IMG/VR virus record: IMGVR_UViG_3300042691_055965
Coordinates: 1 to 64,000 of that record
Direction: 5' to 3' (one strand)
Length of the DNA: 64,000 nucleotides
Part shown: positions 5,040 to 64,000 of the stretch, piece by piece
Position numbering within the stretch: position 1 is the first letter of the stretch
Layout: each line of letters opens with the position of its first letter
Position numbers and translations under genes: made by a program
Notes under the pieces: model-generated
The model's database searches: none
What the model was told of the DNA's origin: nothing
The model's input: the letters and a program-made list of their open reading frames with translations, nothing else

Positions 5040-5648
5040 TTAAATAACATCTTGATTTTTTAAAAAATTAAATAACTCTTTTGCTAATTTTTTCCCGAAA
5101 CTAATATCTGATGGATAATGTGCTTTTGCCATTTGTCTTGAATAAACAATATCTTTTGCAATTTTTTCAAAATCACTTTTAAACTCAGGATACATATAAC
5201 TTAATATGTGACATAAAAGATATGATTGTGTAGAGTGTCCCGATGGGTATGCAAAACCTGTCATTGATTTTAACAAGATATCGTTCATGTCATTATCCAA
5301 TCTGAATGGACGTGGACGTTTGTAGAACATTTTTAATTCACGAACAACTTTTGATACGTCATAATGAATTTTTTCTAATTTTTCTTTTGGGTATTTTATA
5401 TTCTTTTCTTTTAAAAGTTCCACAAAATTTCCATAAATATCATCTTTTTCTTGAACAAATCTTTTGTTTAAATCTATAGTTTTTAAAAATTTAAGTTCGT
5501 TTTTTGTTTTTTGACTATTATCTGCTGGTGGGGGAAATGACTTGAATTTATTTAAATCAAACTTTTTGAACACACCCAAGTCATGTTCTTGATTATTTTC
5601 CAATAACATAAGTTTTTGGATTCTGTTTATTTTTTCATTCAATATCAT
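5040..5648 (-). CDS. PAP2-family (acid phosphatase/haloperoxidase-like) phosphatase with class-B leader
   Basis: Motifs KxxxxRPRP, AYPSGHS, SRxxAKAHYPSD; N-terminus MILNEKINRIQKLMLLE. Confidence 0.85.
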   Translation of the reverse strand: MILNEKINRIQKLMLLENNQEHDLGVFKKFDLNKFKSFPPPADNSQKTKNELKFLKTIDLNKRFVQEKDDIYGNFVELLKEKNIKYPKEKLEKIHYDVSKVVRELKMFYKRPRPFRLDNDMNDILLKSMTGFAYPSGHSTQSYLLCHILSYMYPEFKSDFEKIAKDIVYSRQMAKAHYPSDISFGKKLAKELFNFLKNQDVI

Positions 5649-5660
5649 ATTTATAAATAT
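5647..5660. promoter_or_regulatory. Palindromic double TATTTAT motif (putative bidirectional late promoter)
   Basis: ATATTTATAAATAT between divergent genes starting at 5648(-) and 5675(+); the minus-strand copy ends 4 nt before its ATG. Confidence 0.5.
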
Positions 5661-5674
5661 AAAACCAATTCATT

Positions 5675-6109
5675 ATGATAACAAAAAAAGAATTACTTTC
5701 AAATGGAGTGAAAGGTGAAAAAATGATTTCAGAACAAAAAACTAAAAAAGAATTTTCCGAAATGGTGTCTTTGATATTACATTCAAGAACACAAACCCAT
5801 ACACTACATTTACAAACAGGTTCATACGCTGAACACAAAGCATTGAATGATTACTATGATTCTATTGGTGATATCTTTGATGGATTGGTTGAATCATACC
5901 AAGGTAAATATGGAATTATTGAAAGTTATAAATCTTATGACATCGCACCATATAAAAATACGGAAACTTCTATAAAATATTTACAAGACTTGTGCAAAAA
6001 AGTAGAAAATTTGAGGGATTGTTGTGAAGATTCATATATACAAAATCAAATTGATACGGTTTGTGAATTAATTAATTCAACACTTTATAAATTAAGATTT
6101 TTAAAATAA
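5675..6109 (+). CDS. DUF5856-like ferritin/Dps-like four-helix protein
   Basis: H..HLQT.SYAEHKALNDYYD..D.LVESYQGKYG pattern typical of this phage family. Confidence 0.7.
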   Translation: MITKKELLSNGVKGEKMISEQKTKKEFSEMVSLILHSRTQTHTLHLQTGSYAEHKALNDYYDSIGDIFDGLVESYQGKYGIIESYKSYDIAPYKNTETSIKYLQDLCKKVENLRDCCEDSYIQNQIDTVCELINSTLYKLRFLK

Positions 6110-6664
6110 TTATTTTATAAAATCAACATGGACGTGATCAGTATGTGCTGATTTTCCTCCTGAAGTGTCATAATCATGCCATCCTTTTGGACTATTCCAT
6201 ATTTTATAATTATAAATCACATTTTTAACTTTAAGCTCACTCGCGTTGTCAACCAAGTAGTCAGCAAGTTTTTGCATAGTCGGATCTAAATCACCTCCTT
6301 TTGCGACATAATCCAATGCATTTCCATATGAATGTTCGGACTTTATTTTTGATCCAGCAACGTATCTATCTGCATAACCCCAAATGTTACTCCACTTTCC
6401 TTTAAATTGTGGTTGTGATAGTACATTATTTAAACAATCAACTGCCGGATCAGTCAAAGATTCTAAAGGTGGAAGTGGTTCGTCTTCCATACTTCCACCC
6501 ACTTTTATTTTTACTGGTTGATTACCTGAACGATAATCTATTGCATAATCATTTTTGAAAGGATCTGAAAGTTCTTTTCCGGTTTTTGGATCAACCGCAA
6601 ATTCAAACCCTTCAACAAGTTGTTCGTTGATAATGTCTCCTAATATCTTGACAAATTTCTTCAT
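6110..6664 (-). CDS. Putative LAS/M15-like metallopeptidase (ARB-07466-like C-terminal domain); possible cell-wall hydrolase
   Basis: SEHSYGNALDY ... HTDHVHVDF zinc-ligand pattern. Confidence 0.65.
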   Translation of the reverse strand: MKKFVKILGDIINEQLVEGFEFAVDPKTGKELSDPFKNDYAIDYRSGNQPVKIKVGGSMEDEPLPPLESLTDPAVDCLNNVLSQPQFKGKWSNIWGYADRYVAGSKIKSEHSYGNALDYVAKGGDLDPTMQKLADYLVDNASELKVKNVIYNYKIWNSPKGWHDYDTSGGKSAHTDHVHVDFIK

Positions 6665-6774
6665 TTGTATTAATATAAATATTTGATTTCCAGTAAATGA
6701 TAAAATTTAATTCAGGTTTGGTAAAAAACAACCTATTTCAAAATCTAACGTTATAAAATAAACTATTTATTATT

Positions 6775-8985
6775 ATGAAGCTTTTAAACATAATTTTCTT
6801 TTTTTTAACCTTTGTTGGTTATTCACAGTTCTGTCCAAATTTAGGACCCGATCAATATCTTGCGTGTGGTGTTGGTTCGACTACACTAACTGCGGACTTT
6901 AGTCAATGTGCACCTGGCAGTAACCCAAATCAAACAACAAACTATGGTGTAACAAACATACCATACGTGGCACAAACAAATACAGGGACATCACTTATAA
7001 TGGCTGATGATTCACAACAAGGACCTTTTAATATAGGATTTACTTTTTGTTTTTTTGGACAAACCTATACACAATTTTATGTTGGTTCTAATGGGTGGGT
7101 TTCATTTTCACCAGCTCAACCAACAACATTCACATCAACAACAATCCCATCAGGATTAGGAACAGTCCCAAAGAACTGTATCATGGGTCCTTGGCAAGAT
7201 TGGCATCCTGGAGTTGGGGGACAGATTAGATACCAAGTTCAAGGAACCGCACCATGTAGAAAATTGGTTGTTAGTTGGATAAACGTACCAATGTTTTCTT
7301 GTACTAACTTGACAGGGACATTTCATATTGTAATTTATGAATCAACAAACATTATTGAAAATCATATTCAAAATAAACCTAATTGCTTAGCTTGGGCAGG
7401 AGGAACTGCCGTACAAGGATTACATAACAACAATGGAACATTCGCAGTAACTGTACCAGGTAGAAACTCAACCCAGTGGACTGCTAATAATGATGCAAGA
7501 AGATACACACCAAGTGGGCCTACAGTTATCCCAACACCAACATGGTATCAAGTAGGTAACCCAACACCTATTGGTGTTGGAACATCTATTACGGTAACAC
7601 CACCACAAGCTGGTGCAAATTATACTTGTCAGTTAGTTTATCCTGCTTGTAACGTAGGATGGAACACTTGTAATAATATACCAGGACAAACACCTGACAC
7701 TGTATTTGTACAACCAGGTCCACCAAACCTACAACCATTAAATGTTACTTTTACAAACCCAACTTGTTTTCAAAGTTGTGATGGAACAATCGATGTTACC
7801 CCATCTAACGGAGTTGCTCCTTTTACCTATGTGTGGAGTAATGGACAAGGTACACCAAACCTTATTGATTTATGTGAAGGAATATATGATGTAACAGTAA
7901 CTGACAATCAAGGATGTGATGTAACGGCATCTGTAACACTTACTGATCCTCCACAAGTTGTTATTAATCCGATTCAATCAATCGATACGATTTGTGATTA
8001 TTCATCAAGTGAATTATATTTTGTAAACGACAACGGAAATGGTTACACATATACTTGGACAACACTTGGAAGTATTATAAACGGTCAAGGTAATGATTCA
8101 ATTTACATAAATTGGGACGATAACCCAAGTGGATTTGTTCCCCAAGGTGTGAGTGTAATTGGAATAAATTCGGATGGATGTGAAAGTTTACCTCAAGATT
8201 TTGATTTATACATTTTGGATATAAATCCAACTATACAACAAATCGGACCTTTTTGTGATTATGATGATTGTGCTGATTTGATAGTAAATCCAATTGGTGG
8301 TAATCTATCAGGTTTAGGTGTCAATAATAATCAATTTTGCCCTGATGTGTCTTTGGTTGGTAATAATTCAATTACATATGAATATACTCAAACAAATTGT
8401 ACGTTTGATACTACAATAACTGTGGTTGTAAACCCACAACCAATTTTAGATGACATTAATCCTGATGATGAAATGGTGGAATTTTGTGAAGGTGATATTG
8501 TTAATAGAATATATAGTGTAGAATCCAATTTAAATGGTGGTACTTACTATTGGATTTTAAATGGTGATACAACAGAATCTTACAGTTTAGGACAAAGTTG
8601 GGTTACTAATGGTTACTATACAATACAAGTTTATCAGGTGGTAAATGGATGTGTTTCAGAAACCCAATCAACAACAGTTAATTTGACGACTTGTCCTGAA
8701 GAATTAATTTTTATACCGAATACTTTTACACCTGATGGTGACGAATATAACCAAACATGGTTACCAATATTTACCGAAGGGTTCGATCCGTATGATTATC
8801 AATTAACTATTTTAAATAGATGGGGTGAAGTTGTTTTCGAAAGCAATAACCATACAATTGGATGGTTGGGTGATTACAACGGAAAGGCTTGTACTGAAGG
8901 TGTTTATACTTGGAAAATTGAATTTGGAAATTTAATAAACGATGCTAGAAAAGTACTAGTTGGGCATTTAACACTTATACGATGA
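6775..8985 (+). CDS. Secreted adhesin-like protein with T9SS type-B (gliding motility-associated, CHU_C) C-terminal domain
   Basis: Signal peptide; nidogen-like segment (DDSQQGPFNIGFTFCFFG..YVGSNG); SprB-like repeat (CDGTIDV..GVAPFTYVWSNG); CTD FIPNTFTPDGDEYN..LTILNRWGEVVF..GVYTW..GHLTLIR. Confidence 0.9.
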   Translation: MKLLNIIFFFLTFVGYSQFCPNLGPDQYLACGVGSTTLTADFSQCAPGSNPNQTTNYGVTNIPYVAQTNTGTSLIMADDSQQGPFNIGFTFCFFGQTYTQFYVGSNGWVSFSPAQPTTFTSTTIPSGLGTVPKNCIMGPWQDWHPGVGGQIRYQVQGTAPCRKLVVSWINVPMFSCTNLTGTFHIVIYESTNIIENHIQNKPNCLAWAGGTAVQGLHNNNGTFAVTVPGRNSTQWTANNDARRYTPSGPTVIPTPTWYQVGNPTPIGVGTSITVTPPQAGANYTCQLVYPACNVGWNTCNNIPGQTPDTVFVQPGPPNLQPLNVTFTNPTCFQSCDGTIDVTPSNGVAPFTYVWSNGQGTPNLIDLCEGIYDVTVTDNQGCDVTASVTLTDPPQVVINPIQSIDTICDYSSSELYFVNDNGNGYTYTWTTLGSIINGQGNDSIYINWDDNPSGFVPQGVSVIGINSDGCESLPQDFDLYILDINPTIQQIGPFCDYDDCADLIVNPIGGNLSGLGVNNNQFCPDVSLVGNNSITYEYTQTNCTFDTTITVVVNPQPILDDINPDDEMVEFCEGDIVNRIYSVESNLNGGTYYWILNGDTTESYSLGQSWVTNGYYTIQVYQVVNGCVSETQSTTVNLTTCPEELIFIPNTFTPDGDEYNQTWLPIFTEGFDPYDYQLTILNRWGEVVFESNNHTIGWLGDYNGKACTEGVYTWKIEFGNLINDARKVLVGHLTLIR

Positions 8986-9071
8986 ATATAGATATGTATG
9001 CTTTAGTTGTTACTCCAATTATGATTTTAGTTTCTTTTGTTCTTGTAAGTTTATATAGGAACAGAAAGTAA
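8982..9071 (+). CDS. Unannotated 29-aa single-TM peptide
   Basis: Hand-translated MNIDMYALVVTPIMILVSFVLVSLYRNRK*; ATGA overlap with the T9SS gene stop. Confidence 0.5.
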   Translation: MNIDMYALVVTPIMILVSFVLVSLYRNRK

Positions 9072-9104
9072 ATAGTTTTAGAAAGATTTGTGATATTTAT
9101 ATGT

Positions 9105-10865
9105 ATGACAAATCTTTCAAAAATTTCGTTGGTAATATCAGCCTTTCTGATGTTATTGTTCCTGTGTTCACAATCATTACTTGTTTTTCATTTTATTGAA
9201 TATGTAGATATGATAGGGTATTTTGGTTACGCCATAATACTAGCATTTATCCCATTTTTTTCTGTGTTTGCATATGAATATGTTAAAAGAAACAAAATAG
9301 GTAAGGTAAAAGGTGAATATATAAAAAAACTTAATGAAACAATAATTTCACAATCCCATAATCCATTATTTTATGATGGTGATATTTCTGAAGGAGCAAA
9401 AATTCTAACAAAAGAAGTGTCCACTAATATGGATGTTGATAGATGTTCTGTGTGGCTATACAATGAGGATAGAAGTTCAATTGTATGTCAACAACTATAT
9501 GTTAAATCAGAAAATAGTTGGTATCAGAATATTGAACTACATAAAAAAGATTATTTGGATTACTTCCTTGCTCTTTTGTTAAATCCCGTGATTGTTGCAA
9601 ATGATGCTGAAACTCACCAAGCAACTTCTTGTTTTACTGAATCGTATTTGAAACCTTTGGGTATTAAATCAATGTTGGATGTTCCAATTGTTTATAAGGG
9701 TGACACTATCGGGGTTATTTGTATTGAAAGTTTAGAACCAAAAATGTGGGACAAATGTGAAATTGATTTTGCTCAGATGTTAGCATCACTTTATTCCTTT
9801 TCATACTCCGTAAAAGAAATCAATCGTATAAACAAAACAATAGATGATATTGAGCATTTCATTGATTATTCGGTATTAGTAAGTAAGGCAGACGCAAATG
9901 GTAAAATAACATATGTTAATAAAAGGTTTGAGGATGTATCAGGATGGAAACTAAAACAAGCAATGGGTAAAGACCACAGTATTGTAAATTCAGGTTTTCA
10001 CCCAAAGGAGTTTTGGAAGGATATGTATAAGACAACCGTAAAAGATAGAAAGATATGGAATAAGGTTGTGACAAACAAAAATAGAAATGGTGAAATATAT
10101 TGGGTTGATTCTTATATCATCGCTGAGTTTGATTCTGAAACAGACAAACTAAAAGGATTTATGTCTATTAGATACGATGTAACTGACTTGATGAAAAAAT
10201 CAGAAGAGATTGAAAAAAAGAATACCTATTTGGAACACGCAGCAAAGATATTACGTCACGATATGCACTCAGGTATCAACACCTATATCCCAAGAGGAAT
10301 TAGTTCACTAGAAAGAAGATTAAATGATGATGTAATCAAGGAATTAAAAATTGAATCCCCACTTAAAATGATTAAGGAAGGATTAAAACATTCACAAAAA
10401 GTTTATAAGGGTGTTTATGAATTTACCAATTTGGTTAAAAAAGATTCAAGAATGGGTAAAACTGAATGTAACCTCAAAACTATCTTGGATGAATACCTAC
10501 AATCAACGGCATATAAAAGTCAGGTGATTATTGAGGAATTACCAGTCACTGATGTAAACGAATCTTTATTTTGCACAGCAATTGACAACCTAATCAGAAA
10601 TGGTTTGAAATATAACGATAGTGATACCAAGTTTGTTAAAATATTTATGGAAGAAGACACACTAATTCTACAGGACAATGGTAGAGGGATGACACAAAAA
10701 GATTTTGAATACTTATCCCAACCTTACACAAGAAAACAAAACCAAAAGGAAGGTGGAACGGGACTTGGATTAAACATATGTATCGCAATCTTAAATGAAC
10801 ACGGGTTCAAAATTACCTGTGAGAAAAACGATATTGGAACTAAAATGAAGATTAAACTTAAATGA
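9105..10865 (+). CDS. Sensor histidine kinase 1 (2 TM-GAF-PAS-HisKA-HATPase)
   Basis: GAF (DRCSVWL..SMLDVPI..GVICIE), PAS (ITYVNKRF..SGW..GKDH..IYWVDSYI), H-box ILRHDMHSG, N box DNLIRNGLKYN, G1 DNGRG, G2 GTGLGL; likely ATG at 9105 after TATTTAT. Confidence 0.92.
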   Translation: MTNLSKISLVISAFLMLLFLCSQSLLVFHFIEYVDMIGYFGYAIILAFIPFFSVFAYEYVKRNKIGKVKGEYIKKLNETIISQSHNPLFYDGDISEGAKILTKEVSTNMDVDRCSVWLYNEDRSSIVCQQLYVKSENSWYQNIELHKKDYLDYFLALLLNPVIVANDAETHQATSCFTESYLKPLGIKSMLDVPIVYKGDTIGVICIESLEPKMWDKCEIDFAQMLASLYSFSYSVKEINRINKTIDDIEHFIDYSVLVSKADANGKITYVNKRFEDVSGWKLKQAMGKDHSIVNSGFHPKEFWKDMYKTTVKDRKIWNKVVTNKNRNGEIYWVDSYIIAEFDSETDKLKGFMSIRYDVTDLMKKSEEIEKKNTYLEHAAKILRHDMHSGINTYIPRGISSLERRLNDDVIKELKIESPLKMIKEGLKHSQKVYKGVYEFTNLVKKDSRMGKTECNLKTILDEYLQSTAYKSQVIIEELPVTDVNESLFCTAIDNLIRNGLKYNDSDTKFVKIFMEEDTLILQDNGRGMTQKDFEYLSQPYTRKQNQKEGGTGLGLNICIAILNEHGFKITCEKNDIGTKMKIKLK

Positions 10866-12277
10866 AAAAACTATTATTATTCTTAACAACTTTTATTTTT
10901 GTTGTGAATTCTTATTCACAATTAGAGGCGACTTGGGATCAAGGTGTTCCACTTTGTCCTGAAGACAAATACATTTCAGGTTTGATTGATAAGTTGGGGA
11001 ATAAAAATCTAACAGAACTTGATAGTTTAACTGATAACACAAACCTAAAACTTTTCAGAGAAATTGGTTTTGCGTTTTATGACAAAGGTATGTATGATGC
11101 TGCCGATTGGTATCTAAAAAGAGCAAAAAGATACAAAGAAAAAATTATTGTTGAAAAAACAAAAGACAAAGAAGAAACAAAACCAGAAATATCACAAGAA
11201 GATGCCAAACAAATGAAAAAAGATTTGGAGTTTTTAGGAGGTTTACCAAAATCATATGATAATTTATCAAAAGACGATATGTTGGAGTTGGCAAAAATGA
11301 TTAATAATAAAATTAATCAATTAACTAAAGAAAGGGATTCGATACTTAAAAGTGAAAAACCAAATGAAGAATTACTATCATCAAAAAATAACACAATCAA
11401 ATCATTAGAAAAAGAAAAAGAAGTAATTGATTTAACAATTGAAAGTGATGAATTAAAAGGCGAAACTAAAATATTAAACATAGAAAAGGCGACTTTGAAA
11501 AAGTATTTAACAGGATTAATAATTGGTGCATCAGTACTTATTTTATTCATCCTTGTACTTCTTCAAAGAAAAACAATTAGAGTTAAAGATACAGAAATAG
11601 ATAAACAACTAACCGATATCAATAAGAAAAACAAATACTTAGAATATTCAGCAAGAATCATAAGACACGATATGCACTCTGGTATCAATACTTACATTCC
11701 AAGAGGTATATCATCATTAGAAAAAAGAATCACCCAGGAAGATATTGAAAATCTTAAAATTGCTGCACCCATCAAAATGATTAAAGATGGTTTGAGTCAC
11801 ACACAAAAAGTTTACAAAAGAGTTTATGAATTCACAAACCTTGTAAAACAACAAGTGGTATTAGATAAAAAAGAAACGGACACAACAAAACTATTAACAG
11901 ATTACTTCCAATCCACTTCATATAAGAATCAAGTAGAGATTAGCGAATTAGTAATACTTGATATTAACGACACATTATTTTGTAACGCAATAGACAACTT
12001 AGTTAAAAACGGATTACAATATAACGATAGTGAAGACAAATTAGTTAAGATTTATATGGATAAAAATGACTTAATTGTGGAAGATAACGGTAGAGGGTTT
12101 ACACAAAAGGAATTAGAAACGATAACAGGGAAGTATTTAACTAAAAAGGGGGATTCTGAAATTGGTTTGGGATTAAGTATTAGTAAAACCATTTTAGAAG
12201 AACACGGATTTACAATGACTTGTGAAAAAATTAACAATGGAACTAAAATAAAAATTAAGACAAAAAAAGATGATTGA
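10862..12277 (+). CDS. Sensor histidine kinase 2 (signal peptide, TPR-like/coiled-coil periplasmic region, 1 TM)
   Basis: Kinase core paralogous to HK1: IIRHDMHSGINTYIPRG, DNLVKNGLQYN, DNGRG, GLGL. Confidence 0.9.
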   Translation: MKKLLLFLTTFIFVVNSYSQLEATWDQGVPLCPEDKYISGLIDKLGNKNLTELDSLTDNTNLKLFREIGFAFYDKGMYDAADWYLKRAKRYKEKIIVEKTKDKEETKPEISQEDAKQMKKDLEFLGGLPKSYDNLSKDDMLELAKMINNKINQLTKERDSILKSEKPNEELLSSKNNTIKSLEKEKEVIDLTIESDELKGETKILNIEKATLKKYLTGLIIGASVLILFILVLLQRKTIRVKDTEIDKQLTDINKKNKYLEYSARIIRHDMHSGINTYIPRGISSLEKRITQEDIENLKIAAPIKMIKDGLSHTQKVYKRVYEFTNLVKQQVVLDKKETDTTKLLTDYFQSTSYKNQVEISELVILDINDTLFCNAIDNLVKNGLQYNDSEDKLVKIYMDKNDLIVEDNGRGFTQKELETITGKYLTKKGDSEIGLGLSISKTILEEHGFTMTCEKINNGTKIKIKTKKDD

Positions 12278-12707
12278 TTCTATTTTATTGGTTGATGACG
12301 AAGATTTATTTCATTTAGTATTTGAGGACGCTTGTTCTCTACTTGATATAAGTTTATCTCTACAATCTATTAGTAGTGCAGACGAAGCAGCAAAGATGTT
12401 TAAACAATGGTTTGACGATAAGAATACCAAAGATAAACCTGAATGTGTATTTGTTGATTTAAATATAATTGGTAGTTCTTTTGATGGAATTGAGCTTGTA
12501 AGAAGAATTAACTTTGAATATGGTAATCATGTTGTTATTGGAATTATTTCTTCATCAAACGAACCAGATGAACAAGCAAAGGCACTTCAATCAGGTGCAC
12601 AATTTTGGATTATCAAATCAGATGAAATCGAACCAAGATTGGAAGAATTTAAAAAAGATTATGAGGGGTATAAAACAAGAACCGCTCCTTTTAAAATTTA
12701 CAGATGA
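12270..12707 (+). CDS. Stand-alone receiver-domain response regulator
   Basis: LLVDDED acidic pocket, VFVDLN phospho-acceptor Asp, IISSS, IIKS; no output domain. Confidence 0.92.
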   Translation: MIDSILLVDDEDLFHLVFEDACSLLDISLSLQSISSADEAAKMFKQWFDDKNTKDKPECVFVDLNIIGSSFDGIELVRRINFEYGNHVVIGIISSSNEPDEQAKALQSGAQFWIIKSDEIEPRLEEFKKDYEGYKTRTAPFKIYR

Positions 12708-25138: not shown

Positions 25139-25996
25139 ATGGGAACAAGATTTGATGAAGATAATTACAAACATTGGAAGGATACTTTTAAATTCCAATC
25201 TTATGATGAAGAAAAAGCAGAATATAAAACTGTGAAAATTAATATGGAAGATGTAATGGATAGAATTGATCATTACAGAAAAAAATATGATGAAGACGAT
25301 GCATTTGTTCGTGCGGTTATTGACACACACGATAAAGTAGTAAGAATCATGTTTACTAAAGATTTAGCACATTTGACTGAATCGGTTCATTTAAATGGAT
25401 TTGCGGCACTTTTGAAAGTTTTGAGAGAATCAAAAGGTGAAATGGAGATTTGGTCGGTTGCAAGACCTACCGATGGTAACTGGTTTTTGGTAAAAGGTTC
25501 CTTCACCAAAAGAGAACTTGCAAATATGGATTTACACAAAAAAGAACCAAGAGACAAAAAAGAAACAAAAAAAGAAAATCCTTATCAGGAGTTAAAAAAA
25601 AAAGAAGAAAAATCGGTAGAAAGACTGAAGAATAACGAAAAAGATGGTTTTGATAGTTTACCAATTAAGGTGAAAGAGAAATTAAAAGAAAAGTTATCAA
25701 AAGGTTGGACAACTGAAGAACCATTATCTTTCTTTAAAGATTTTTATACTGAAAGTGAAATAAATTCTGTTTTCAATGACAAGATAAAAATTTATAAATT
25801 GAAGGCTACAGAAGAATTTTTTAACAAATTAAAAGAATATTCTGCACACATTCCTATAAGTAGAGGTTTTTGTAAATCGATTGTCAAATCTAAAAACGAC
25901 GCTGATATCACATCTGACGTAGAAAAATATGTAAATCACTTTGTTAAAAAGTGTAACGAAAAATACGAAGGAAAATTTGGTTTACATTCTTTCTGA
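25139..25996 (+). CDS. Hypothetical protein
   Basis: 285 aa ORF within the operon. Confidence 0.75.
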   Translation: MGTRFDEDNYKHWKDTFKFQSYDEEKAEYKTVKINMEDVMDRIDHYRKKYDEDDAFVRAVIDTHDKVVRIMFTKDLAHLTESVHLNGFAALLKVLRESKGEMEIWSVARPTDGNWFLVKGSFTKRELANMDLHKKEPRDKKETKKENPYQELKKKEEKSVERLKNNEKDGFDSLPIKVKEKLKEKLSKGWTTEEPLSFFKDFYTESEINSVFNDKIKIYKLKATEEFFNKLKEYSAHIPISRGFCKSIVKSKNDADITSDVEKYVNHFVKKCNEKYEGKFGLHSF

Positions 25997-26017
25997 TAAA
26001 GACAATATTTATTATTA

Positions 26018-28435
26018 ATGAAAAGAATTTTCACTATATCTGAACAAGAAAAAAGTGCAATATTGGAAAAATATTACCTTTTGAAAGAAGTAGATACCCG
26101 TAATTGCTCTGAAGGTGATTGTGTTGATGGTGAAGGTACACTTGTAATCAATAGTAAGTTCGGTAATGTTGAAGTAGAAAAAACTTTCATTGGTACTTTT
26201 AAAAAAAGTATTCTAACTAACGGGGAAATCACAATCAATACCGGTGTTAATACAACATATCAGAGTGGAAATTTCAAGAATGGGGAACTTTTAACTGGAG
26301 AAGGTTTGTACATACAAGAAGTACCAAGTGAAAACTTTAGACAAGTCACAAAAGGTACGTTTGTTGATGGGTATTTAACTAAAGGTACGACTGAAGTCAC
26401 TATATCTTCAATGAGTTTTACTATTAAAAGTGACAATGTTGTTAAAAACACTTATAAGGATGCTGAAATTAAATTTAATGACGGATCAATATATTATGGA
26501 GACATTACGGACAACACATCAAATTTTGAATTCAAATCGAAAACAAAGGGTTTAGAAACTGATGATTTAGTTCAATTTCATATAAAAACAGAAGGAAGTC
26601 AATCAGATGTTGAACGGACAACTAGTACACCCACAGTAACTCCAAGTGTGTCTACAAATTCTACAAATACTGATACTAAAATAACAGATGAATTAAGGGC
26701 TAAATGGACAGGTTGTGAATATACGGCTGACGACTTGTTCCGATTCAACAAACCCGAAGATGATTATGTCACAGAAATACCAGAACTAGGTTATTTCAAA
26801 TTTGAAGGTGAAGTTGATGGTAAAAACATAAAAGTAAACGCTTGTTTTGACAACTTCAAATTAATTAAAACACAAGAAGGAAATGAGACAGGTGATAGGG
26901 GTGAATTTAATGGTGTATACTATAGTGAGGATGATGGATTACCTTTAAAATTTGAAGGAGATGAATCCAAAGCTAATAAGTTCAAAAGAGGAAGATTACT
27001 AAATTCACCTGACTACGATTTTCATGTCGAAAAGTTTGAATACATAGGAACATTTGACAATGGTATCATTCATAGTCCAAAAATTAGTGAAGGTTCTTCT
27101 GTTGAAAATATATTCGCAAAATCTGAAATACTTTTCGAAGATAATTCATATTATAATGGAAATTTTGAAAATGGTAAAATAAAAGGTTACGGCATTTTTA
27201 CAATCCCAAGTAAAGGAAAATTTGAAGGCGAATTTGAACAAGTAAAAAATGATAACGGCAATACCACATATAAAGTTACATTATCGAATGGTGCGGTTAT
27301 TGAAGATTTGATGGATTATGCCTCGAAAGTAAAATTTAGTACTGATAAAACCACTGATACATATTTGGGTGTTTTAAAAGGGGCTAAAGTAAATGGAACC
27401 GTTTTTTATCAATCAGTATATACTTTGAAAACTGATGATGGAAAAAAGACAGAAAACACTTATAAGGGTGGCTTGATGGGTGCCACCGTTGTTTTAAAAT
27501 CCAAATCATCTGAAATTGAAACGGAAGGTGAAATAATAAAAGGTAAAACATTTGAAACCACCACAGATGAAAATGGTAAATTTACATTTGATGGTGTTCC
27601 ATACGGAACTTATGATATAAAAATTAGATTTGGTGATAAATTGTCACCGTATTTTAAATACGATGCTGAAAATTTAAAAATCGATTCGAATAAAACGTAT
27701 GAGATTACAACAGTTAAAACAAAAAAACTTGAAAAAAGGGAACAAGATTATTTAGATCAAGAAAGTTTCAGTGCTGAAGATTTAGAAGACTTTACAGAAG
27801 AAAATTACAAAAATCTTATTTTAAAATCATTATTGAAATCCCATAAGGATGATTCTACTTATGTTGAGGATATTTTGGATGGTACTTTTAAACAAAAATA
27901 TGGAAAAAGAACCGCTTTAAAATTTTGTACCACTCAATTCAATAATTATGCCGATGAATTGAAACAAGTGTATTTGAAAAAAGTAAGTGATGCGTCTATA
28001 AAATCCGCAGAAGAAATAGAACCATCTAAAAAAGTTTTACAATATTGTTGGAATAATTACAAAGAGGAATTATCAAAAAAAATTAAAAAGGATGACTTGA
28101 GTTTAATCCAACAACCTGGTGGAAAACTATTAGTATATCAAGTTGATTTGAAAGAAAATTACAATAGACAATATATTTATACTAAAGAAAATGATATGAA
28201 AGAAACTATAAAAAATATCATTAAAGAACATGCAAGAATTAAGAAGATTCAATCATCTACTGAATCTAAAATTATTGAAAACCGTTTGAATTTCATTTTT
28301 GAAGACAGCACGGGTTATACAACAAGAAACAAAATCAGAAAAAATTTATTGAGTGAAAAAAACCAACTCCTTTATATGGGGTATACACCAAAACTTGTAA
28401 ATGAAATTTTTAATAGGTTTATGGTAAAAATATAG
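26018..28435 (+). CDS. MORN-like repeat protein with carboxypeptidase-regulatory-like beta domain
   Basis: CSEGDCVDGEG, YYNGNFENGKIKGYG, TTTDENGKFTFDGVPYGTYDI; leader MKRIFTISEQEKSAILE. Confidence 0.7.
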   Translation: MKRIFTISEQEKSAILEKYYLLKEVDTRNCSEGDCVDGEGTLVINSKFGNVEVEKTFIGTFKKSILTNGEITINTGVNTTYQSGNFKNGELLTGEGLYIQEVPSENFRQVTKGTFVDGYLTKGTTEVTISSMSFTIKSDNVVKNTYKDAEIKFNDGSIYYGDITDNTSNFEFKSKTKGLETDDLVQFHIKTEGSQSDVERTTSTPTVTPSVSTNSTNTDTKITDELRAKWTGCEYTADDLFRFNKPEDDYVTEIPELGYFKFEGEVDGKNIKVNACFDNFKLIKTQEGNETGDRGEFNGVYYSEDDGLPLKFEGDESKANKFKRGRLLNSPDYDFHVEKFEYIGTFDNGIIHSPKISEGSSVENIFAKSEILFEDNSYYNGNFENGKIKGYGIFTIPSKGKFEGEFEQVKNDNGNTTYKVTLSNGAVIEDLMDYASKVKFSTDKTTDTYLGVLKGAKVNGTVFYQSVYTLKTDDGKKTENTYKGGLMGATVVLKSKSSEIETEGEIIKGKTFETTTDENGKFTFDGVPYGTYDIKIRFGDKLSPYFKYDAENLKIDSNKTYEITTVKTKKLEKREQDYLDQESFSAEDLEDFTEENYKNLILKSLLKSHKDDSTYVEDILDGTFKQKYGKRTALKFCTTQFNNYADELKQVYLKKVSDASIKSAEEIEPSKKVLQYCWNNYKEELSKKIKKDDLSLIQQPGGKLLVYQVDLKENYNRQYIYTKENDMKETIKNIIKEHARIKKIQSSTESKIIENRLNFIFEDSTGYTTRNKIRKNLLSEKNQLLYMGYTPKLVNEIFNRFMVKI

Positions 28436-45232: not shown

Positions 45233-45280
45233 ATCTATATTTTATATATAAATATGGCGATAAGTACAAAACTTCCGGCG

Positions 45281-45697
45281 TGGAGGTGCGGAGAGTCGAA
45301 CTCCGGTCCATAACATCCTGTCAGATAAGGACTACACGTTTAGGTTAAGGTTTTTCATACCTTCCAAAATATTTGGTTCCTATTTTGACATTGTTACCAA
45401 CAACTGTGTCGAGTTCACTTTTGTTACGGTAGCACTCTGAACGAGACCGTTTGTTTCTTTTCGGGTAGAAACCACACCTTTGTAAAGACTTCTGTTGCTA
45501 GGTTATATGTCCACCGACCCCCCGTTTCCGTGCTTAACTTAAGCTACAGTAACTTCTTCAGTTGAAATTAAACCAACCACTGAAAGGTTTTCTAAAACGT
45601 CGCCATTTGCAACTTGAATCAGTTTTTAAGGAGATTAATTCAGTCCCCACGTGCCCTTATTCTTCAGCCAATGCCTGTCAAATCCAAAACCACCCCC
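45281..45697 (-). ncRNA. ssrA: tmRNA (417 nt), tag ANGDVLENLSVVGLISTEEVTVA*
   Basis: 5' GGGGGTG..TTGGATTTGAC pairs with 3' CACCTCC-A including the G3:U70 Ala determinant; T-arm CCGGAGTTCGACTCTCCG; tag ORF 45610..45539. Confidence 0.92.
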
Positions 45698-47996: not shown

Positions 47997-50045
47997 TTAT
48001 TGTGTTTTTATTTTTCTTTTTGTTGGTTTTTTTATTTTAATATCTGTTTTATCTTCTTTTTGATTGTATGATAAAATAAACTTGGAATTTTTTTCTGGGT
48101 TATCAGAAAGGATTTTATCTGTTATATAATCGTCAACCCATTTCTGAACCGTTCTTTTTAAAATCCTTGCTCCAAACCTTGTATCAGTTCCAATTGAAAT
48201 AATATGTTTTTTCAAGGTATCGTCAACCTCAACATCAAATTCAATTTTTCTAACTCTTTCATATACTTTTTCCAATTCCAAATCAATAATTTCCATCAAG
48301 TTATCTTCATCCAAATCTTTGAAATAAACAATATCATCAAATCTATTTATAAATTCTGGAACAAATCTTTTGAAAAGTTCTTTTTCCAACACTGATTTTA
48401 TTTCTTCTTCTTTTTGTTCAATTTTTGTTGCCGTCGAAAATCCTACACCTGTTCCAAATTGTTGAACGGCTCTTGTTCCAACATTTGATGTCATCAATAT
48501 AATACAATTTTTGAAATTGATTTTTCTTCCATGTCCATCGGTTAAAAATCCTTCATCGAGCATTTGCAAAAACACATTGAAGATTTCAGGGTGGGCTTTT
48601 TCAATTTCATCAAGTAAAATAACAGAATATGGTTTGTTTTTAATTTTATTCAAAAAAGGAGAACCATCATCATATCCAACATAACCTGGCGATGTTCCTG
48701 TTAATTTTGATGTTGATATTTTATCTGAAAATTCGCTCATGTCAAGTCTGATAAGAGCATCTTCTGAATTGAACATATGTTTTGCAAGTTGTTTTGCAAG
48801 TTCCGTTTTTCCAACACCGGAATTACCAATTAAAAGTCCACTGAATATCGGTCTTTTTGGATCGTTCAAACCAACTTTATTTCTTTGGATAGCTCTTGCA
48901 ATTTTTGCAATTGCATCATCTTGTCCAATAACCTTTTTATTAAGTGTGTCCTTTAATGTTTTAAGTTGTTCTGATTCATCAGTTGTGATTTTATTGATTG
49001 GAATTTTTGTCATAAGTGACACAACATCATAAACAATATCTTCTGTTACTTCTCTTTTGAAAAGGTTTCTATTTTTTTCAAATTCATCTTTTTCCTTTTC
49101 AAGCTCAAGAAGTATTTTTCTTTCTTTATCTCTTAAATTTGCTGCTTCTTCGTACTTTTGACTATTAATAACTCGAATTTTTTCCTTTTTAATGTCTTCT
49201 GCCTTTTTTTTCAAATCTTCGATAATTTCAGGTAATTTGATTTCAACTTGCGACCTGGCACCAACCTCATCGATTATATCAAACGCCTTGTCAGGAAATT
49301 CTCTATCTGTGATGTAACGATCAGCCAATTCAACACAAAGTTTTAATATGTCATCACTGTACTTTACCTTATGATAATCTTCATACCTTTCTTTTGTATT
49401 ATACAAGATTTCAAGTGTTTCTTCTTTTGTTGACGGATCTACCATTACCTTTTGAAACCTCCTTTCAAGTGCTCCGTCCTTTTCAATGTTTTTTCTATAT
49501 TCTTCAAGTGTTGTTGCTCCAATACATTGTAATTCACCACGGGACAGGGCTGGTTTGAAAATATTTGATGCATCCATTGTACCTGATGCGTTTCCTGCAC
49601 CAATCATTGTATGAATTTCATCGATGAAAATAATAATGTCAGGATTTGCATAAAGTTCTTCCATTATAACTTTCATTCTTTCTTCAAATTGTCCTCTGTA
49701 TTTTGTTCCTGCAACAACAGATGTCATGTCTAATGAAACAATTCTTTTATTTGCCAAATTTTGGGGACAATCACCTTCGAATATTTTCTTTGCAAGTCCT
49801 TCAATAATTGCTGTTTTTCCACAACCAGGTTCACCAAGAACGATTGGGTTGTTCTTTTTTCTTCTTGATAAAATCTGTGCAATTCTATTGATTTCGTTTT
49901 CTCTCCCAACAATCGGGTCTAGTTTTCCTTCTTCTGCTAGTAATATTAAATCTCTTGAAAAATTATCCAAAACGGGGGTTTTTGACGAACCTGTTGATTG
50001 TGATTTGTTTTTGGATTTTTCGTTGCTATCTGCTGAATCAATCAT
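47997..50045 (-). CDS. clpC: ClpC-like double AAA+ ATPase lacking the N-terminal Clp repeat domain
   Basis: Walker A GEPGCGKT and GNSGVGKT; Walker B IFIDEIH and ILLDEIEKAHP; UVR motif YEEAANLRD; GVGF ClpP-docking loop. Confidence 0.9.
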   Translation of the reverse strand: MIDSADSNEKSKNKSQSTGSSKTPVLDNFSRDLILLAEEGKLDPIVGRENEINRIAQILSRRKKNNPIVLGEPGCGKTAIIEGLAKKIFEGDCPQNLANKRIVSLDMTSVVAGTKYRGQFEERMKVIMEELYANPDIIIFIDEIHTMIGAGNASGTMDASNIFKPALSRGELQCIGATTLEEYRKNIEKDGALERRFQKVMVDPSTKEETLEILYNTKERYEDYHKVKYSDDILKLCVELADRYITDREFPDKAFDIIDEVGARSQVEIKLPEIIEDLKKKAEDIKKEKIRVINSQKYEEAANLRDKERKILLELEKEKDEFEKNRNLFKREVTEDIVYDVVSLMTKIPINKITTDESEQLKTLKDTLNKKVIGQDDAIAKIARAIQRNKVGLNDPKRPIFSGLLIGNSGVGKTELAKQLAKHMFNSEDALIRLDMSEFSDKISTSKLTGTSPGYVGYDDGSPFLNKIKNKPYSVILLDEIEKAHPEIFNVFLQMLDEGFLTDGHGRKINFKNCIILMTSNVGTRAVQQFGTGVGFSTATKIEQKEEEIKSVLEKELFKRFVPEFINRFDDIVYFKDLDEDNLMEIIDLELEKVYERVRKIEFDVEVDDTLKKHIISIGTDTRFGARILKRTVQKWVDDYITDKILSDNPEKNSKFILSYNQKEDKTDIKIKKPTKRKIKTQ

Positions 50046-63613: not shown

Positions 63614-64000
63614 ATGGGAGCATTATTAGAATCAGGTCTTGTTGGTAACATCGGTCTTAAGCACCTTAAAGTTATCAAAGAAGATACAATTAACAAATGG
63701 GATAAATTAGGATTCCTAGACGGTCTTAAAGGACACATCAAAGAGAACATGGCACAATTATATGAAAACCAAGCGTCTCACCTAATTAACGAAGCCGCGT
63801 CAACTGATAGTTCAGGTTCTTTCGAAACTGTAGTTTTCCCTATCGTTCGTCGTGTATTCTCTAAATTGTTGGCTAACGACATCGTTTCTGTACAAGCAAT
63901 GAACTTACCTATTGGTAAATTGTTCTACTTCGTACCTAAAATCCAAGGTTACACAACTGCAAATCCTACCACAAGTGCAATTCACAACCAACCAATTGGT
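63614..64000 (+). CDS. Major capsid protein (T4 gp23-like), 5' partial
   Basis: Hand-translated MGALLESG..KWDKLGFL..QLYENQ..LINEAAS..VFPIVRRVFSKLLANDIVSVQAMNLPIGKLFYF; runs off the window. Confidence 0.95.
   Translation, partial: MGALLESGLVGNIGLKHLKVIKEDTINKWDKLGFLDGLKGHIKENMAQLYENQASHLINEAASTDSSGSFETVVFPIVRRVFSKLLANDIVSVQAMNLPIGKLFYFVPKIQGYTTANPTTSAIHNQPIG

What the first reader, a model, noticed from the sequence alone, without database searches (positions are those of the whole stretch)
6775..8985. Phage gene for a host-T9SS cargo adhesin
Seen: signal peptide, nidogen-like and SprB-like segments, and a complete type-B T9SS CTD, with the phage TATTTAT motif 4 nt before the ATG. Established: type-B CTD proteins are exported by the Bacteroidota T9SS and displayed on the surface with help from PorP/SprF-like partners. 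Inference: the phage uses host secretion to remodel the infected-cell surface (superinfection exclusion, aggregation, altered gliding or grazing). It lies just upstream of the kinase operon and may be functionally linked to it.
Basis: partly seen in the sequence, partly recalled or inferred. Interest (0 to 1): 0.7.

Follow-up and report, generated by a model that had tools for sequence, protein, structure and literature searches.

The report
Jumbo-phage gene for T9SS surface adhesin
A giant freshwater phage of Bacteroidota carries a well-kept, host-derived gene for a surface adhesin that has every signal needed for export by the host's type IX secretion system, so the phage probably puts its own protein on the surface of the infected cell.

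Summary
ORF 6775-8985 (+) encodes a 736-aa protein with these parts:
- a Bacteroidota-style signal peptide;
- a very conserved 300-aa head that is only weakly NIDO-like;
- one SprB repeat and Ig/PKD-like domains;
- a type-B T9SS C-terminal domain (CTD) that passes both curated cut-offs.

TATTTAT ends 4 nt before the ATG, and this placement is strongly enriched in the genome.

The contig is not chimeric here. The window is the start of a 229-kb T4-like jumbo-phage record. At least 141 viral contigs carry a single-copy homolog in phage contexts.

In a tree of the head domain, all viral copies form one clade. Its nearest cellular neighbours are Crocinitomicaceae/Flavobacteriales genes. One chromosomal copy lies inside the viral clade.

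The gene is accessory: it sits in at least eight different genomic contexts and is missing from two complete relatives. No phage examined encodes a PorP/SprF shuttle. The cellular homologs are "orphan" type-B cargo too.

A complex model docks the phage CTD on an orphan Crocinitomicaceae PorP/SprF protein (score 0.65, best control 0.00) through the invariant CTD motifs.

Export and surface display by the host are therefore well supported in silico. Expression, timing and biological role are untested. Adjacency to the kinase operon is seen in only 13 of 87 loci. Phage-encoded T9SS cargo (type A) was reported once before, so this is a new variant of a known kind.

The parts
6764..6770 (+). TATTTAT motif, ending 4 nt before the start codon. 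It is a recurrent signal of this phage; whether it is a promoter or a translation-initiation signal is not decided.
   Evidence: Sequence read. The motif ends 4-6 nt before the ATG of 26 of 209 ORFs, against 0.26 to 4 expected. It is found 2-8 nt upstream of 8 of 62 distinct viral homologs and 0 of 49 cellular ones.
6775..8985 (+). Whole ORF: a 736-aa secreted adhesin-like protein. The stop codon is at 8983-8985.
   Evidence: More than 1,500 homologs were found, the closest at 92% identity.
6775..6828 (+). Sec signal peptide, aa 1-18, with the predicted cleavage after YSQ.
   Evidence: The N-terminus was read. Its physicochemical design is conserved while its sequence drifts.
6829..7734 (+). 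Head domain, aa 19-320. It is a cysteine-rich beta-sandwich with an Ig-like subdomain, distantly NIDO-like, and is the most conserved part of the protein.
   Evidence: AF2 model with pLDDT 91.4 and pTM 0.85. Mean identity is 77% among phage copies and 50-66% to cellular copies. No solved fold relative was found. NIDO hits appear in 12 of 41 homologs.
7735..8709 (+). Stalk of about four Ig-like domains, aa 321-645. It includes one SprB repeat (aa 324-359, nt 7744-7851) and a PKD_6-like domain (aa 397-466).
   Evidence: Pfam matches. All-beta model with pLDDT 77-92. The best PDB matches are the Ig-like repeats of the Aureispira grappling-hook protein GhpA.
8710..8982 (+). Type-B T9SS C-terminal sorting domain, aa 646-736.
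   Evidence: CHU_C and TIGR04131 are both over their cut-offs. TIGR04131 is matched by 32 of 32 phage homologs. The invariant motifs around 648-653, 681-684, 697-699, 709-711 and 730 largely coincide with the predicted interface with a PorP/SprF shuttle.

Best explanation
This is an accessory, moron-like gene of a T4-like jumbo phage of Flavobacteriales, probably Crocinitomicaceae.

Origin (inferred from a midpoint-rooted tree): it was captured once from a host family of 'orphan' type-B T9SS adhesins and has since been inherited and moved around within the phage lineage.

Proposed mechanism:
1. In the infected cell the protein is made from the phage genome.
2. Its signal peptide takes it through Sec into the periplasm.
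3. Its type-B C-terminal domain hands it to the host T9SS translocon.
4. A host PorP/SprF-like outer-membrane shuttle collects it. The phage encodes no shuttle of its own.
5. It stays on the cell surface, holding the conserved NIDO-like head on a short stalk of four Ig-like domains.

What is shown by computation: the gene's phage origin, its signals, their conservation, its descent, the lack of a phage shuttle, and a model of CTD-shuttle docking.

What is inferred from family knowledge: actual export, surface anchoring, expression timing, and the benefit to the phage. Possible benefits are keeping or changing the infected cell's adhesion, or masking or displacing a receptor.
For: Phage origin and distribution:
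- Phage identity of the window and record.
- The same gene lies mid-contig in 195-301-kb phage contigs. The left flank is syntenic (UvrC-like, PAP2, DUF5856), and in other contigs so is the right flank (kinase operon, lysin).
- 141 IMG/VR contigs carry a relative. It is single-copy in six large records.

Secretion signals:
- CTD over both curated cut-offs, and in 32 of 32 phage homologs.
- Signal peptide design kept in all 62 viral and 49 cellular copies checked.

Descent:
- Head-domain tree: 67 viral rows plus one cellular row form one clade (SH-aLRT 99). Its nearest cellular neighbours are Crocinitomicaceae/Flavobacteriales rows.
- GC3 of 0.186 is typical of the phage (0.203 +/- 0.028), so this is not a recent capture.

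Accessory nature:
- At least eight different genomic contexts.
- Absent from two complete relatives that share 77-80% capsid identity.

Shuttle:
- No PorP/SprF in this record or in five relatives that are 93-100% complete. The same search found 10-22 copies per Bacteroidota genome.
- The cellular homologs are orphans as well.
- Published work: type-B cargo needs a specific PorP/SprF shuttle, orphan cargo shares an orphan shuttle, and type-B cargo are predicted adhesins (PMC12618676).
- Complex model of phage aa 557-736 with an orphan PorP/SprF of a Crocinitomicaceae MAG: score 0.65, best of 3 controls 0.00. That mark was reached by 51 of 78 solved complexes and 2 of 108 mismatched pairs. Runs agree in at least 96% of contacts, and partner pLDDT is 74-75. 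The interface falls on the invariant CTD motifs.

Wider pattern:
- The same phage encodes two type-A CTD proteins, one of them an S8 peptidase.
- All five near-complete relatives carry at least one type-B CTD gene.
Against: - There is no expression evidence of any kind. The single RNA-labelled run is probably DNA and holds only fragments.
- The host is inferred, not known, and the shuttle used in the model was picked from several orphan candidates. By the tool's own notes, a pass shows likeness to the family and does not tell which member binds.
- In F. johnsoniae, over-produced type-B cargo is not secreted unless its shuttle is co-produced (PMC12618676). A strongly expressed phage gene without a shuttle might therefore be exported only in small amounts.
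- In about 33 of 87 related loci the gene sits between the tail-tube and baseplate-hub genes, on the same strand. That placement would also fit a virion protein.
- The direction of transfer depends on a midpoint root.
Confidence: 0.68

Rival explanations
1. Virion component. The protein would be a tail or baseplate-associated fibre or decoration built from Ig-like modules, and the signal peptide and CTD would be relics or serve another purpose.
For: - The order tail tube, this gene, baseplate hub, all on one strand with a spacer of about 77 nt, is seen in about 33 of 87 related loci.
- SprB-repeat proteins without signal peptides exist in the same genome and look like virion fibres.
- The TATTTAT motif also precedes large genes of the 19-44 kb structural block.
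Against: - A cleavable Sec signal is kept by selection on its properties in every copy. It would remove the protein from the cytoplasm, where virions assemble.
- All type-B CTD motifs are invariant and form a predicted shuttle interface.
- The gene is missing from two complete close relatives and moves between at least eight contexts, unlike core tail genes.
- A copy nested in the phage clade sits next to enolase, rpoA and secY in a bacterial chromosome.
- The gene matches no PHROG family.
Confidence: 0.1
2. Shuttle competition or receptor masking. The main effect would not be adhesion. The phage cargo would occupy the scarce, non-recycled host orphan PorP/SprF shuttle and surface sites, so the host's own orphan type-B adhesins (possible phage receptors) are displaced. 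That would exclude superinfecting phages or stop progeny from adsorbing to debris. This is a special case of the best explanation.
For: - Type-B shuttles are scarce, appear to be used stoichiometrically rather than recycled, and can be shared between cargo with similar CTDs (PMC12618676).
- The phage CTD is 45-61% identical to those of the nearest cellular homologs.
- T9SS-secreted adhesins such as SprB and RemA are thought to be flavobacterial phage receptors, and phage resistance maps to T9SS and gliding genes (PMC9804748).
- The predicted docking on an orphan shuttle passed.
Against: - The head domain, not the CTD, is the most constrained part (77% against 56% identity). That points to a ligand-binding role of the passenger itself.
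- The receptor of this phage is unknown, and there is no timing information.
Confidence: 0.15
3. Host DNA or assembly chimera. The gene would belong to the bacterial flank of a 'provirus' record, or would have been joined to the phage by mis-assembly.
For: - IMG/VR labels the record 'provirus', and the gene lies 6.8 kb from its left end.
- The gene family is abundant in Bacteroidota chromosomes.
- The gene's GC content (0.355) is above the genome mean.
Against: - Both flanks are syntenic with the interior of independent 120-301-kb phage contigs from other samples.
- Contigs of two other DNA runs match exactly across the gene's start, and one of them also across its end into the kinase gene.
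- The protein falls inside the viral clade.
- GC3 is typical of the phage.
- No integrase is present in the record.
Confidence: 0.02

Closest known systems
Orphan type-B CTD adhesins of Bacteroidota. [quoted passage not shown]
   Same: - Sec signal peptide, Ig-like or SprB-repeat passenger, and a TIGR04131 CTD with conserved motifs.
- No porP/sprF gene next to the cargo gene, in the phage copies and in the cellular homologs checked.
- Predicted docking on an orphan PorP/SprF protein.
   Different: - It is encoded by a lytic-looking jumbo phage.
- The stalk is shorter: about 735 aa against about 1,040-1,090 aa in the nearest cellular clades.
- The head domain is a separate, uncharacterised NIDO-like module.
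Phage-encoded T9SS type-A cargo in 'Cryophage' (Bellas et al. 2020, Nat Commun, PMC7468147).
   Same: A phage of Bacteroidota carries genes with T9SS sorting domains and is presumed to use the host system. The present phage also has two type-A CTD genes.
   Different: - The cargo there is type A only (PorV-dependent): glycoside hydrolases and a PA14 protein, highly variable between variants, and described as a unique occurrence.
- Here the CTD is type B and needs a specific shuttle. The passenger is an adhesin-like head conserved at about 77% identity across a large jumbo-phage family.
Lambda Lom and Bor, and the T5 Llp lipoprotein: phage morons for host-envelope proteins (from my own knowledge, not tested here).
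   Same: An accessory phage gene, sometimes lodged within the tail gene cluster, whose product goes to the host envelope by a host export route and changes surface properties or blocks receptors.
   Different: No sequence or fold relation. Those proteins use the Sec/Bam or Lol routes in Proteobacteria, not T9SS.
SprB gliding adhesin with its shuttle SprF.
   Same: One Pfam SprB repeat and a type-B CTD.
   Different: SprB is a giant protein (several thousand residues) encoded directly upstream of sprF. This protein has 736 aa, one SprB repeat, a different head and no adjacent shuttle gene. It is not an SprB orthologue.
Aureispira grappling-hook protein GhpA (PDB 9flp and related entries).
   Same: These are the best Foldseek matches of the full model, through tandem Ig-like repeats.
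   Different: TM-scores are low (0.22-0.55), and the match covers the repeats only. The head has no counterpart there.

Membership tests
T9SS type-B sorting-domain proteins (TIGR04131 / Pfam CHU_C) | C-terminal domain matches the family model above the curated cut-off and lies at the very C-terminus. | tested here: met
   TIGR04131 scores 43.8 bits against a cut-off of 35, over aa 647-736 of 736. CHU_C scores 53.5 bits against 27. All 32 phage homologs tested match TIGR04131.
T9SS type-B sorting-domain proteins (TIGR04131 / Pfam CHU_C) | N-terminal Sec signal peptide for delivery to the periplasm. | tested here: met
   The N-terminus has a basic n-region, a hydrophobic core and an SQ-type boundary, kept in all copies. 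This was judged by inspection and a hydropathy heuristic; no dedicated predictor was available.
T9SS type-B sorting-domain proteins (TIGR04131 / Pfam CHU_C) | Conserved motif blocks within the last 100 residues, reported as required for secretion (PMC12618676). | tested here: inconclusive
   Five blocks of invariant residues are present (648-653, 681-684, 697-699, 709-711, 730), and most lie in the predicted shuttle interface. The paper's motif sequences appear only in a figure, so a one-to-one mapping could not be made.
T9SS type-B sorting-domain proteins (TIGR04131 / Pfam CHU_C) | Secretion depends on the T9SS and on a PorP/SprF-like shuttle. | not testable with these tools
   Only a model is available: ipSAE 0.65 against 0.00 for the best control, with an orphan PorP/SprF of a Crocinitomicaceae MAG. 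No phage-encoded shuttle was found.
NIDO (nidogen-like) domain, PF06119 | Match to the Pfam model at or above the gathering score. | tested here: not met
   The window protein gives no hit at E up to 10. Twelve of 41 homologous heads hit at E up to 1, the best at 1.1e-4. It is at most a distant relative, so 'NIDO-like' is a resemblance and not membership.
SprB gliding adhesin orthologues | Very large protein made of many SprB repeats, with sprF immediately downstream. | tested here: not met
   The protein has one SprB repeat in 736 aa. The downstream gene is a GAF-PAS histidine kinase, and the genome has no PorP/SprF.
Phage morons / accessory host-interaction genes | Present or absent among close relatives, at variable positions, and of host origin. 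| tested here: met
   The gene is absent from two complete relatives and present in a third. It occupies at least eight contexts. The viral clade lies among cellular lineages on a midpoint-rooted tree.
Phage morons / accessory host-interaction genes | Own transcription signals and expression independent of neighbouring genes. | tested here: inconclusive
   The gene has its own upstream TATTTAT motif. A different conserved spacer element precedes the copies in the tail module. No terminator-like site lies downstream, and no RNA data exist.

The most novel reading that the evidence does not exclude
A whole clade of freshwater jumbo phages may run a 'borrowed secretome': type-A and type-B T9SS cargo without any shuttle of their own.

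This adhesin would then work by capturing the host's scarce, non-recycled orphan PorP/SprF shuttle. The host's own orphan adhesins, which are candidate phage receptors, would be replaced on the surface of the infected cell by a phage-made look-alike head on a shorter stalk. That would be superinfection exclusion, or protection of progeny, through competition for a secretion shuttle.
Probability: 0.15. Interest if true: 0.8.

Novelty: new variant of a known kind. Interest (0 to 1): 0.62.

Why it matters
T9SS cargo encoded by phages has been noted once, for type-A signals in a single cryoconite phage.

Here a type-B signal, which needs a specific and scarce outer-membrane shuttle, is conserved across a large, globally sampled family of jumbo phages that encode no shuttle. 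The same phages also carry type-A cargo, including a subtilisin-like peptidase.

If the protein is exported as predicted:
- These phages change the surface and exoproteome of infected Flavobacteriales in lakes. That bears on particle attachment, aggregation, grazing and phage receptor availability.
- They offer natural experiments on how type-B CTDs are matched to PorP/SprF shuttles, which is an open question in the T9SS field.
- The chromosomal copy nested in the phage clade shows gene flow in both directions and points to Crocinitomicaceae as hosts for an uncultured jumbo-phage group.

Tried and rejected
- **Expression.** Two run searches found only one RNA-labelled run. On laying, it was flagged as probably DNA, with a few 151-nt fragments mostly 90-95% alike. 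Nothing can be said about expression.
- **Fold of the head.** Foldseek against PDB gave no match at E < 0.001. VIA-align gave a best Z of 7.1, covering only an 80-residue Ig-like part, which is within the noise range the tool itself states. PDB sequence and profile searches were empty.
- **Full-length fold search.** The results were dominated by generic Ig-repeat proteins and say nothing about function.
- **Sigma-70 promoter and terminator scan.** The counts were no better than in shuffled sequence, as expected for Bacteroidota.
- **Kinase link through PorY.** The NCBIfam PorY model matches only the ATPase domain (about 45 bits against a cut-off of 350). Weak kinase hits near two cellular homologs are 99-aa generic matches 4.5 kb away on the other strand. 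I rejected these as evidence of a conserved adhesin-kinase module.
- **porP/sprF next to cellular homologs.** A tblastn search with 16 reference shuttles found one in only 3 of 80 loci, none directly downstream. The sensitivity of that blast is limited, but the HMM-based positions in five genomes agree.
- **Temperate lifestyle.** No tyrosine integrase was found in the 229 kb. The record is estimated 76% complete, so absence is not proven.
- **Cultured relatives.** No cultured phage in the GenBank phage set has the gene.
Full report
**1. What is at the coordinates**

ORF 6775-8985 (+) encodes 736 aa. Its C-terminus matches Pfam CHU_C (53.5 bits, cut-off 27) and NCBIfam TIGR04131, the type-B T9SS sorting domain (43.8 bits, cut-off 35). 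The TIGR04131 match covers model positions 3-85 of 85 and runs to the last residue. One SprB repeat (aa 324-359, 44.4 bits, cut-off 28) and a sub-threshold PKD_6 domain follow a 300-aa head that has no Pfam hit of its own.

The first 18 residues form a typical Bacteroidota signal peptide that ends in YSQ. TATTTAT occupies 6764-6770, 4 nt before the ATG. In the 229-kb genome the motif ends 4-6 nt before the ATG of 26 of 209 ORFs. Only 0.26 are expected from the genome-wide rate, and 4 from the rate in upstream regions. Only 'nidogen-like' is soft. The window protein itself does not hit NIDO, but 12 of 41 homologous heads do at E up to 1 (best 1.1e-4), and an Atlas feature search gives NIDO clusters at 0.87.

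**2. Is it phage?**

The window is bases 1-64000 of an IMG/VR record of 229,188 bp, labelled 'provirus' and estimated 76% complete. The window holds a large terminase, a portal, a tail-fibre-like gene and a Lon-like protease. The Gp23-type major capsid gene starts at 63614. Tail sheath, tube and baseplate hub lie at 126-132 kb. No tyrosine integrase was found.

Homologs of the adhesin at 62-64% identity lie in the middle of 195-kb and 301-kb contigs, among Gp23, Mom, PAP2, DUF5856, peptidoglycan hydrolase and UvrC-like genes. Tblastn of all proteins of this phage against the fetched loci shows both flanks of the window gene to be syntenic with independent viral contigs. The left flank (UvrC-like, ORF 3697, PAP2, DUF5856) recurs in L007, L042, L059, L085 and L086. 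The junction with the kinase operon and the lysin recurs in L053, L069 and L070.

Contigs of two other DNA runs match exactly across the gene's start, and one of them also across its end into the kinase gene. The gene's GC3 (0.186) is typical of the phage (0.203 +/- 0.028). Its higher overall GC comes from the composition of the head. The chimera or host-flank reading is rejected.

**3. How widespread, and core or accessory?**

The protein search returned more than 1,500 relatives. The best 120 listed are mostly about 735 aa or about 812-821 aa long and up to 92% identical. In IMG/VR, 141 contigs encode a relative. The gene is single-copy in six large records, two of them 99-100% complete. ESM Atlas clusters with the same head fold are labelled 98-100% Uroviricota.

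The position varies. The contexts seen are:
- between tail tube and baseplate hub, on the same strand (about 33 of 87 loci);
- after DUF5856;
- before the kinase operon (13 of 87 loci, in two arrangements);
- next to the Lon-like protease;
- several others.

Among complete relatives with 77-80% identical capsid protein, two lack the head domain (296 kb; 321 kb with terminal repeats) and one has it. It is thus an accessory, mobile gene and not a core structural one.

All five near-complete relatives examined nevertheless carry at least one CHU_C gene, four carry type-A CTD genes, and none carries PorP/SprF. The window's own phage has two type-A cargo genes just after the capsid gene. One is an S8 peptidase with SprB repeats, the other a small SprB-repeat protein. 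They sit in a run of five signal-peptide genes at 65.6-72.5 kb.

**4. Descent**

A maximum-likelihood tree of the head domain (146 distinct rows, quick search, LG+C20+F+G4, SH-aLRT support only) puts all 67 viral rows and one MAG row in one clade (support 99). Its nearest neighbours are Crocinitomicaceae/Flavobacteriales rows, and it lies inside a wider set of Bacteroidota rows. The root is at the midpoint, so the direction host-to-phage is the parsimonious reading and is not proven.

The one cellular row inside the viral clade (L093) lies in a Crocinitomicaceae chromosome. It sits between a 2,251-aa type-A cargo gene and enolase, carA, L17, rpoA, S4 and secY. That suggests a transfer back from phage to host and points to that family as host.

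The nearest cultured capsid relatives are a Microcystis phage (43%) and the Flavobacterium phages 'immuto' (41.5%). No cultured phage has the adhesin.

**5. Anatomy and constraint**

With 41 head sequences, AlphaFold2 gives a confident model (pLDDT 91.4, pTM 0.85). It is a beta-sandwich of about 190 residues with an Ig-like subdomain formed by the N- and C-terminal strands. No solved structure matches it. AlphaFold DB and Atlas matches are uncharacterised surface proteins of Bacteroidota and of phages, many with T9SS CTDs.

The full model shows four Ig-like domains and the CTD. Its best PDB matches are the Ig-like repeats of the Aureispira grappling-hook protein.

Mean identity to the window protein among the phage copies, by region:

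| Region | Identity |
|---|---|
| Head | 77% |
| CTD | 56% |
| Stalk domains | 40-51% |
| Signal peptide | 43% |

The signal peptide keeps its physicochemical design despite its low identity. Cellular relatives have the same head (50-66% identical) on longer stalks, about 1,040-1,090 aa in the nearest clades. The head is therefore the working part, and both export signals are under selection.

**6. The shuttle question**

Published work on F. johnsoniae (PMC12618676) shows the following:
- Type-B cargo needs a specific PorP/SprF-like shuttle, usually encoded directly downstream.
- The shuttles are scarce, and over-produced cargo is not secreted unless its shuttle is co-produced. The authors infer that shuttles are used stoichiometrically rather than recycled.
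- Three 'orphan' cargo proteins share one orphan shuttle.
- Cross-talk between cargo and non-cognate shuttles occurs when CTDs are similar.

The phage has no shuttle gene. The cellular homologs are orphans too. In five genomes the HMM-located PorP/SprF genes are all several kb or more from the homolog, and none lies directly downstream. Blast found a shuttle within 8 kb in only 3 of 80 loci. The Crocinitomicaceae MAG that holds L093 has 48 CHU_C genes but 21 PorP/SprF genes.

I modelled phage residues 557-736 with one orphan PorP/SprF of that MAG. The score was 0.65 and the best of 3 controls 0.00. That mark was reached by 51 of 78 solved complexes and 2 of 108 mismatched pairs. The three runs share at least 96% of contacts, and partner pLDDT is 74-75. 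The contacts fall on 644-652, 678-686, 702-714 and 727-736, which largely coincide with the invariant blocks of the phage family. By the tool's own caveats this shows likeness to the cargo-shuttle family. It does not show which shuttle binds, or that binding occurs in a cell.

**7. Most likely mechanism**

The phage expresses a host-derived orphan type-B adhesin. Sec and the host T9SS export it, a host orphan shuttle collects and anchors it, and the conserved head is displayed on the infected cell.

The phage origin, the signals, their conservation, the descent, the lack of a phage shuttle and the docking model are shown by computation. Export, anchoring, timing and benefit are inferred.

Two roles are compatible with the data. 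One is keeping or changing the infected cell's adhesion during a long jumbo-phage infection. The other is competing with host adhesins for shuttle and surface, which could mask receptors. T9SS adhesins are thought to be flavobacterial phage receptors (PMC9804748). The stronger constraint on the head than on the CTD favours a role for the passenger's own binding activity.

**8. Rivals**

A virion role is suggested by the tail-module position in a third of the loci and by SprB-repeat proteins without signal peptides elsewhere in the genome. It is hard to reconcile with the conserved Sec signal, the intact CTD, the accessory distribution and the chromosomal copy.

Adjacency is seen in 13 of 87 loci. 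One relative (L042) has the window's arrangement minus the kinase operon. No terminator-like site separates the two genes in the window, but the kinase gene has its own TATTTAT motif. The kinases are not PorY-like beyond the ATPase domain.

**9. Comparison and novelty**

The closest functional analogues are the orphan type-B adhesins of Bacteroidota. [quoted passage not shown]

Full-text searches combining T9SS with jumbo or huge phages, or the type-B domain name with phage, found no report of type-B cargo in phages. A 2026 survey of freshwater jumbophages mentions neither secretion nor Bacteroidota. I rate the finding a new variant of a known kind: the same idea (a phage borrows T9SS), but with the shuttle-dependent signal class, a conserved adhesin passenger, and clade-wide distribution.

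**10. Limits**

- The host is not identified directly.
- No RNA or protein data exist.
- The tree is a quick search with a midpoint root.
- The signal peptide was judged without a dedicated predictor.
- The shuttle in the complex model was one of about six orphan candidates.
- Whether the TATTTAT motif is a promoter or a translation signal is not decided. It recurs upstream of only some homologs (8 of 62 at 2-8 nt).

Noticed in passing
window 45278-45697 (-): A phage-encoded tmRNA. ARAGORN calls it with the tag peptide EKKQTVSFRVLP, and Rfam RF00023 matches the full model at 97.3 bits (gathering score 47).
   Followed up: partly
window 9090/9105-13381 (+): A phage-encoded two-component module directly downstream of the adhesin. 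It comprises a membrane GAF-PAS histidine kinase, a second kinase with a signal-peptide-like N-terminus and a transmembrane segment, a stand-alone receiver protein (12270-12707) and a 225-aa ORF with no Pfam hit. The module recurs next to the adhesin in 13 of 87 related loci and is absent from others (L042 has the same arrangement without it).
   Followed up: partly
G000:C1:65628-72545 (just beyond the window; L185): Five consecutive genes with Bacteroidota-type signal peptides lie right after the major capsid gene. They are an S8 subtilase with SprB repeats and a type-A T9SS CTD, a 275-aa SprB-repeat protein with a type-A CTD, a 198-aa SprB-repeat protein, and two proteins of unknown function (318 and 663 aa) whose C-termini look CTD-like. 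Together they look like a phage 'secretome'.
   Followed up: partly
L093 (Crocinitomicaceae MAG contig JBILRE010000002.1, 241 kb), locus 7902-10451: A chromosomal homolog whose head domain is nested inside the viral clade (SH-aLRT 97 with L018/L019). It lies beside enolase, carA, L17, rpoA, S4 and secY. This is a probable phage-to-host transfer and a pointer to the host family.
   Followed up: partly
L015, L039, L044, L047, L058 and about 28 more viral loci: Where the homolog sits between the tail tube and the baseplate hub, a different conserved spacer element of about 30 nt precedes its ATG (consensus roughly gcttttactttcttt-aatatattg-gctt) instead of TATTTAT. It could be a promoter of that subclade.
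   Followed up: no
G000:C1:171760-174456 and 181696-183345 (L186): Two large SprB-repeat proteins without signal peptides (898 and 549 aa). They are candidates for virion fibres built from the same repeat type that the secreted proteins use.
   Followed up: no
window 5040-6664: Host-like accessory genes lie upstream. They are a PAP2 phosphatase (-), a DUF5856 protein that PHROGs annotates as a starvation-inducible regulator (+), and a 184-aa ORF (-) with an H..D...HxH-type C-terminus that looks like a small peptidoglycan peptidase. In L007 a Peptidase_M23 gene occupies that last place.
   Followed up: no
window 47997-50045 (-): A Lon-like ATP-dependent protease (phrog_4871, E 3.5e-222), conserved in several relatives next to the adhesin (L024-L027).
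   Followed up: no
G000 whole record: IMG/VR labels the record 'provirus', yet no tyrosine integrase is found and both ends look like phage. The label may come from the many host-like genes (T9SS cargo, kinases) near the left end.
   Followed up: partly
LR745206.1 (634,780 bp) 25807-27963, and LR756502.1 (642,428 bp): Two uncultured megaphage records of more than 600 kb also carry relatives. The first has 54.6% protein identity over 99% of the query. The second matches only the stalk and CTD, at 29%.
   Followed up: no
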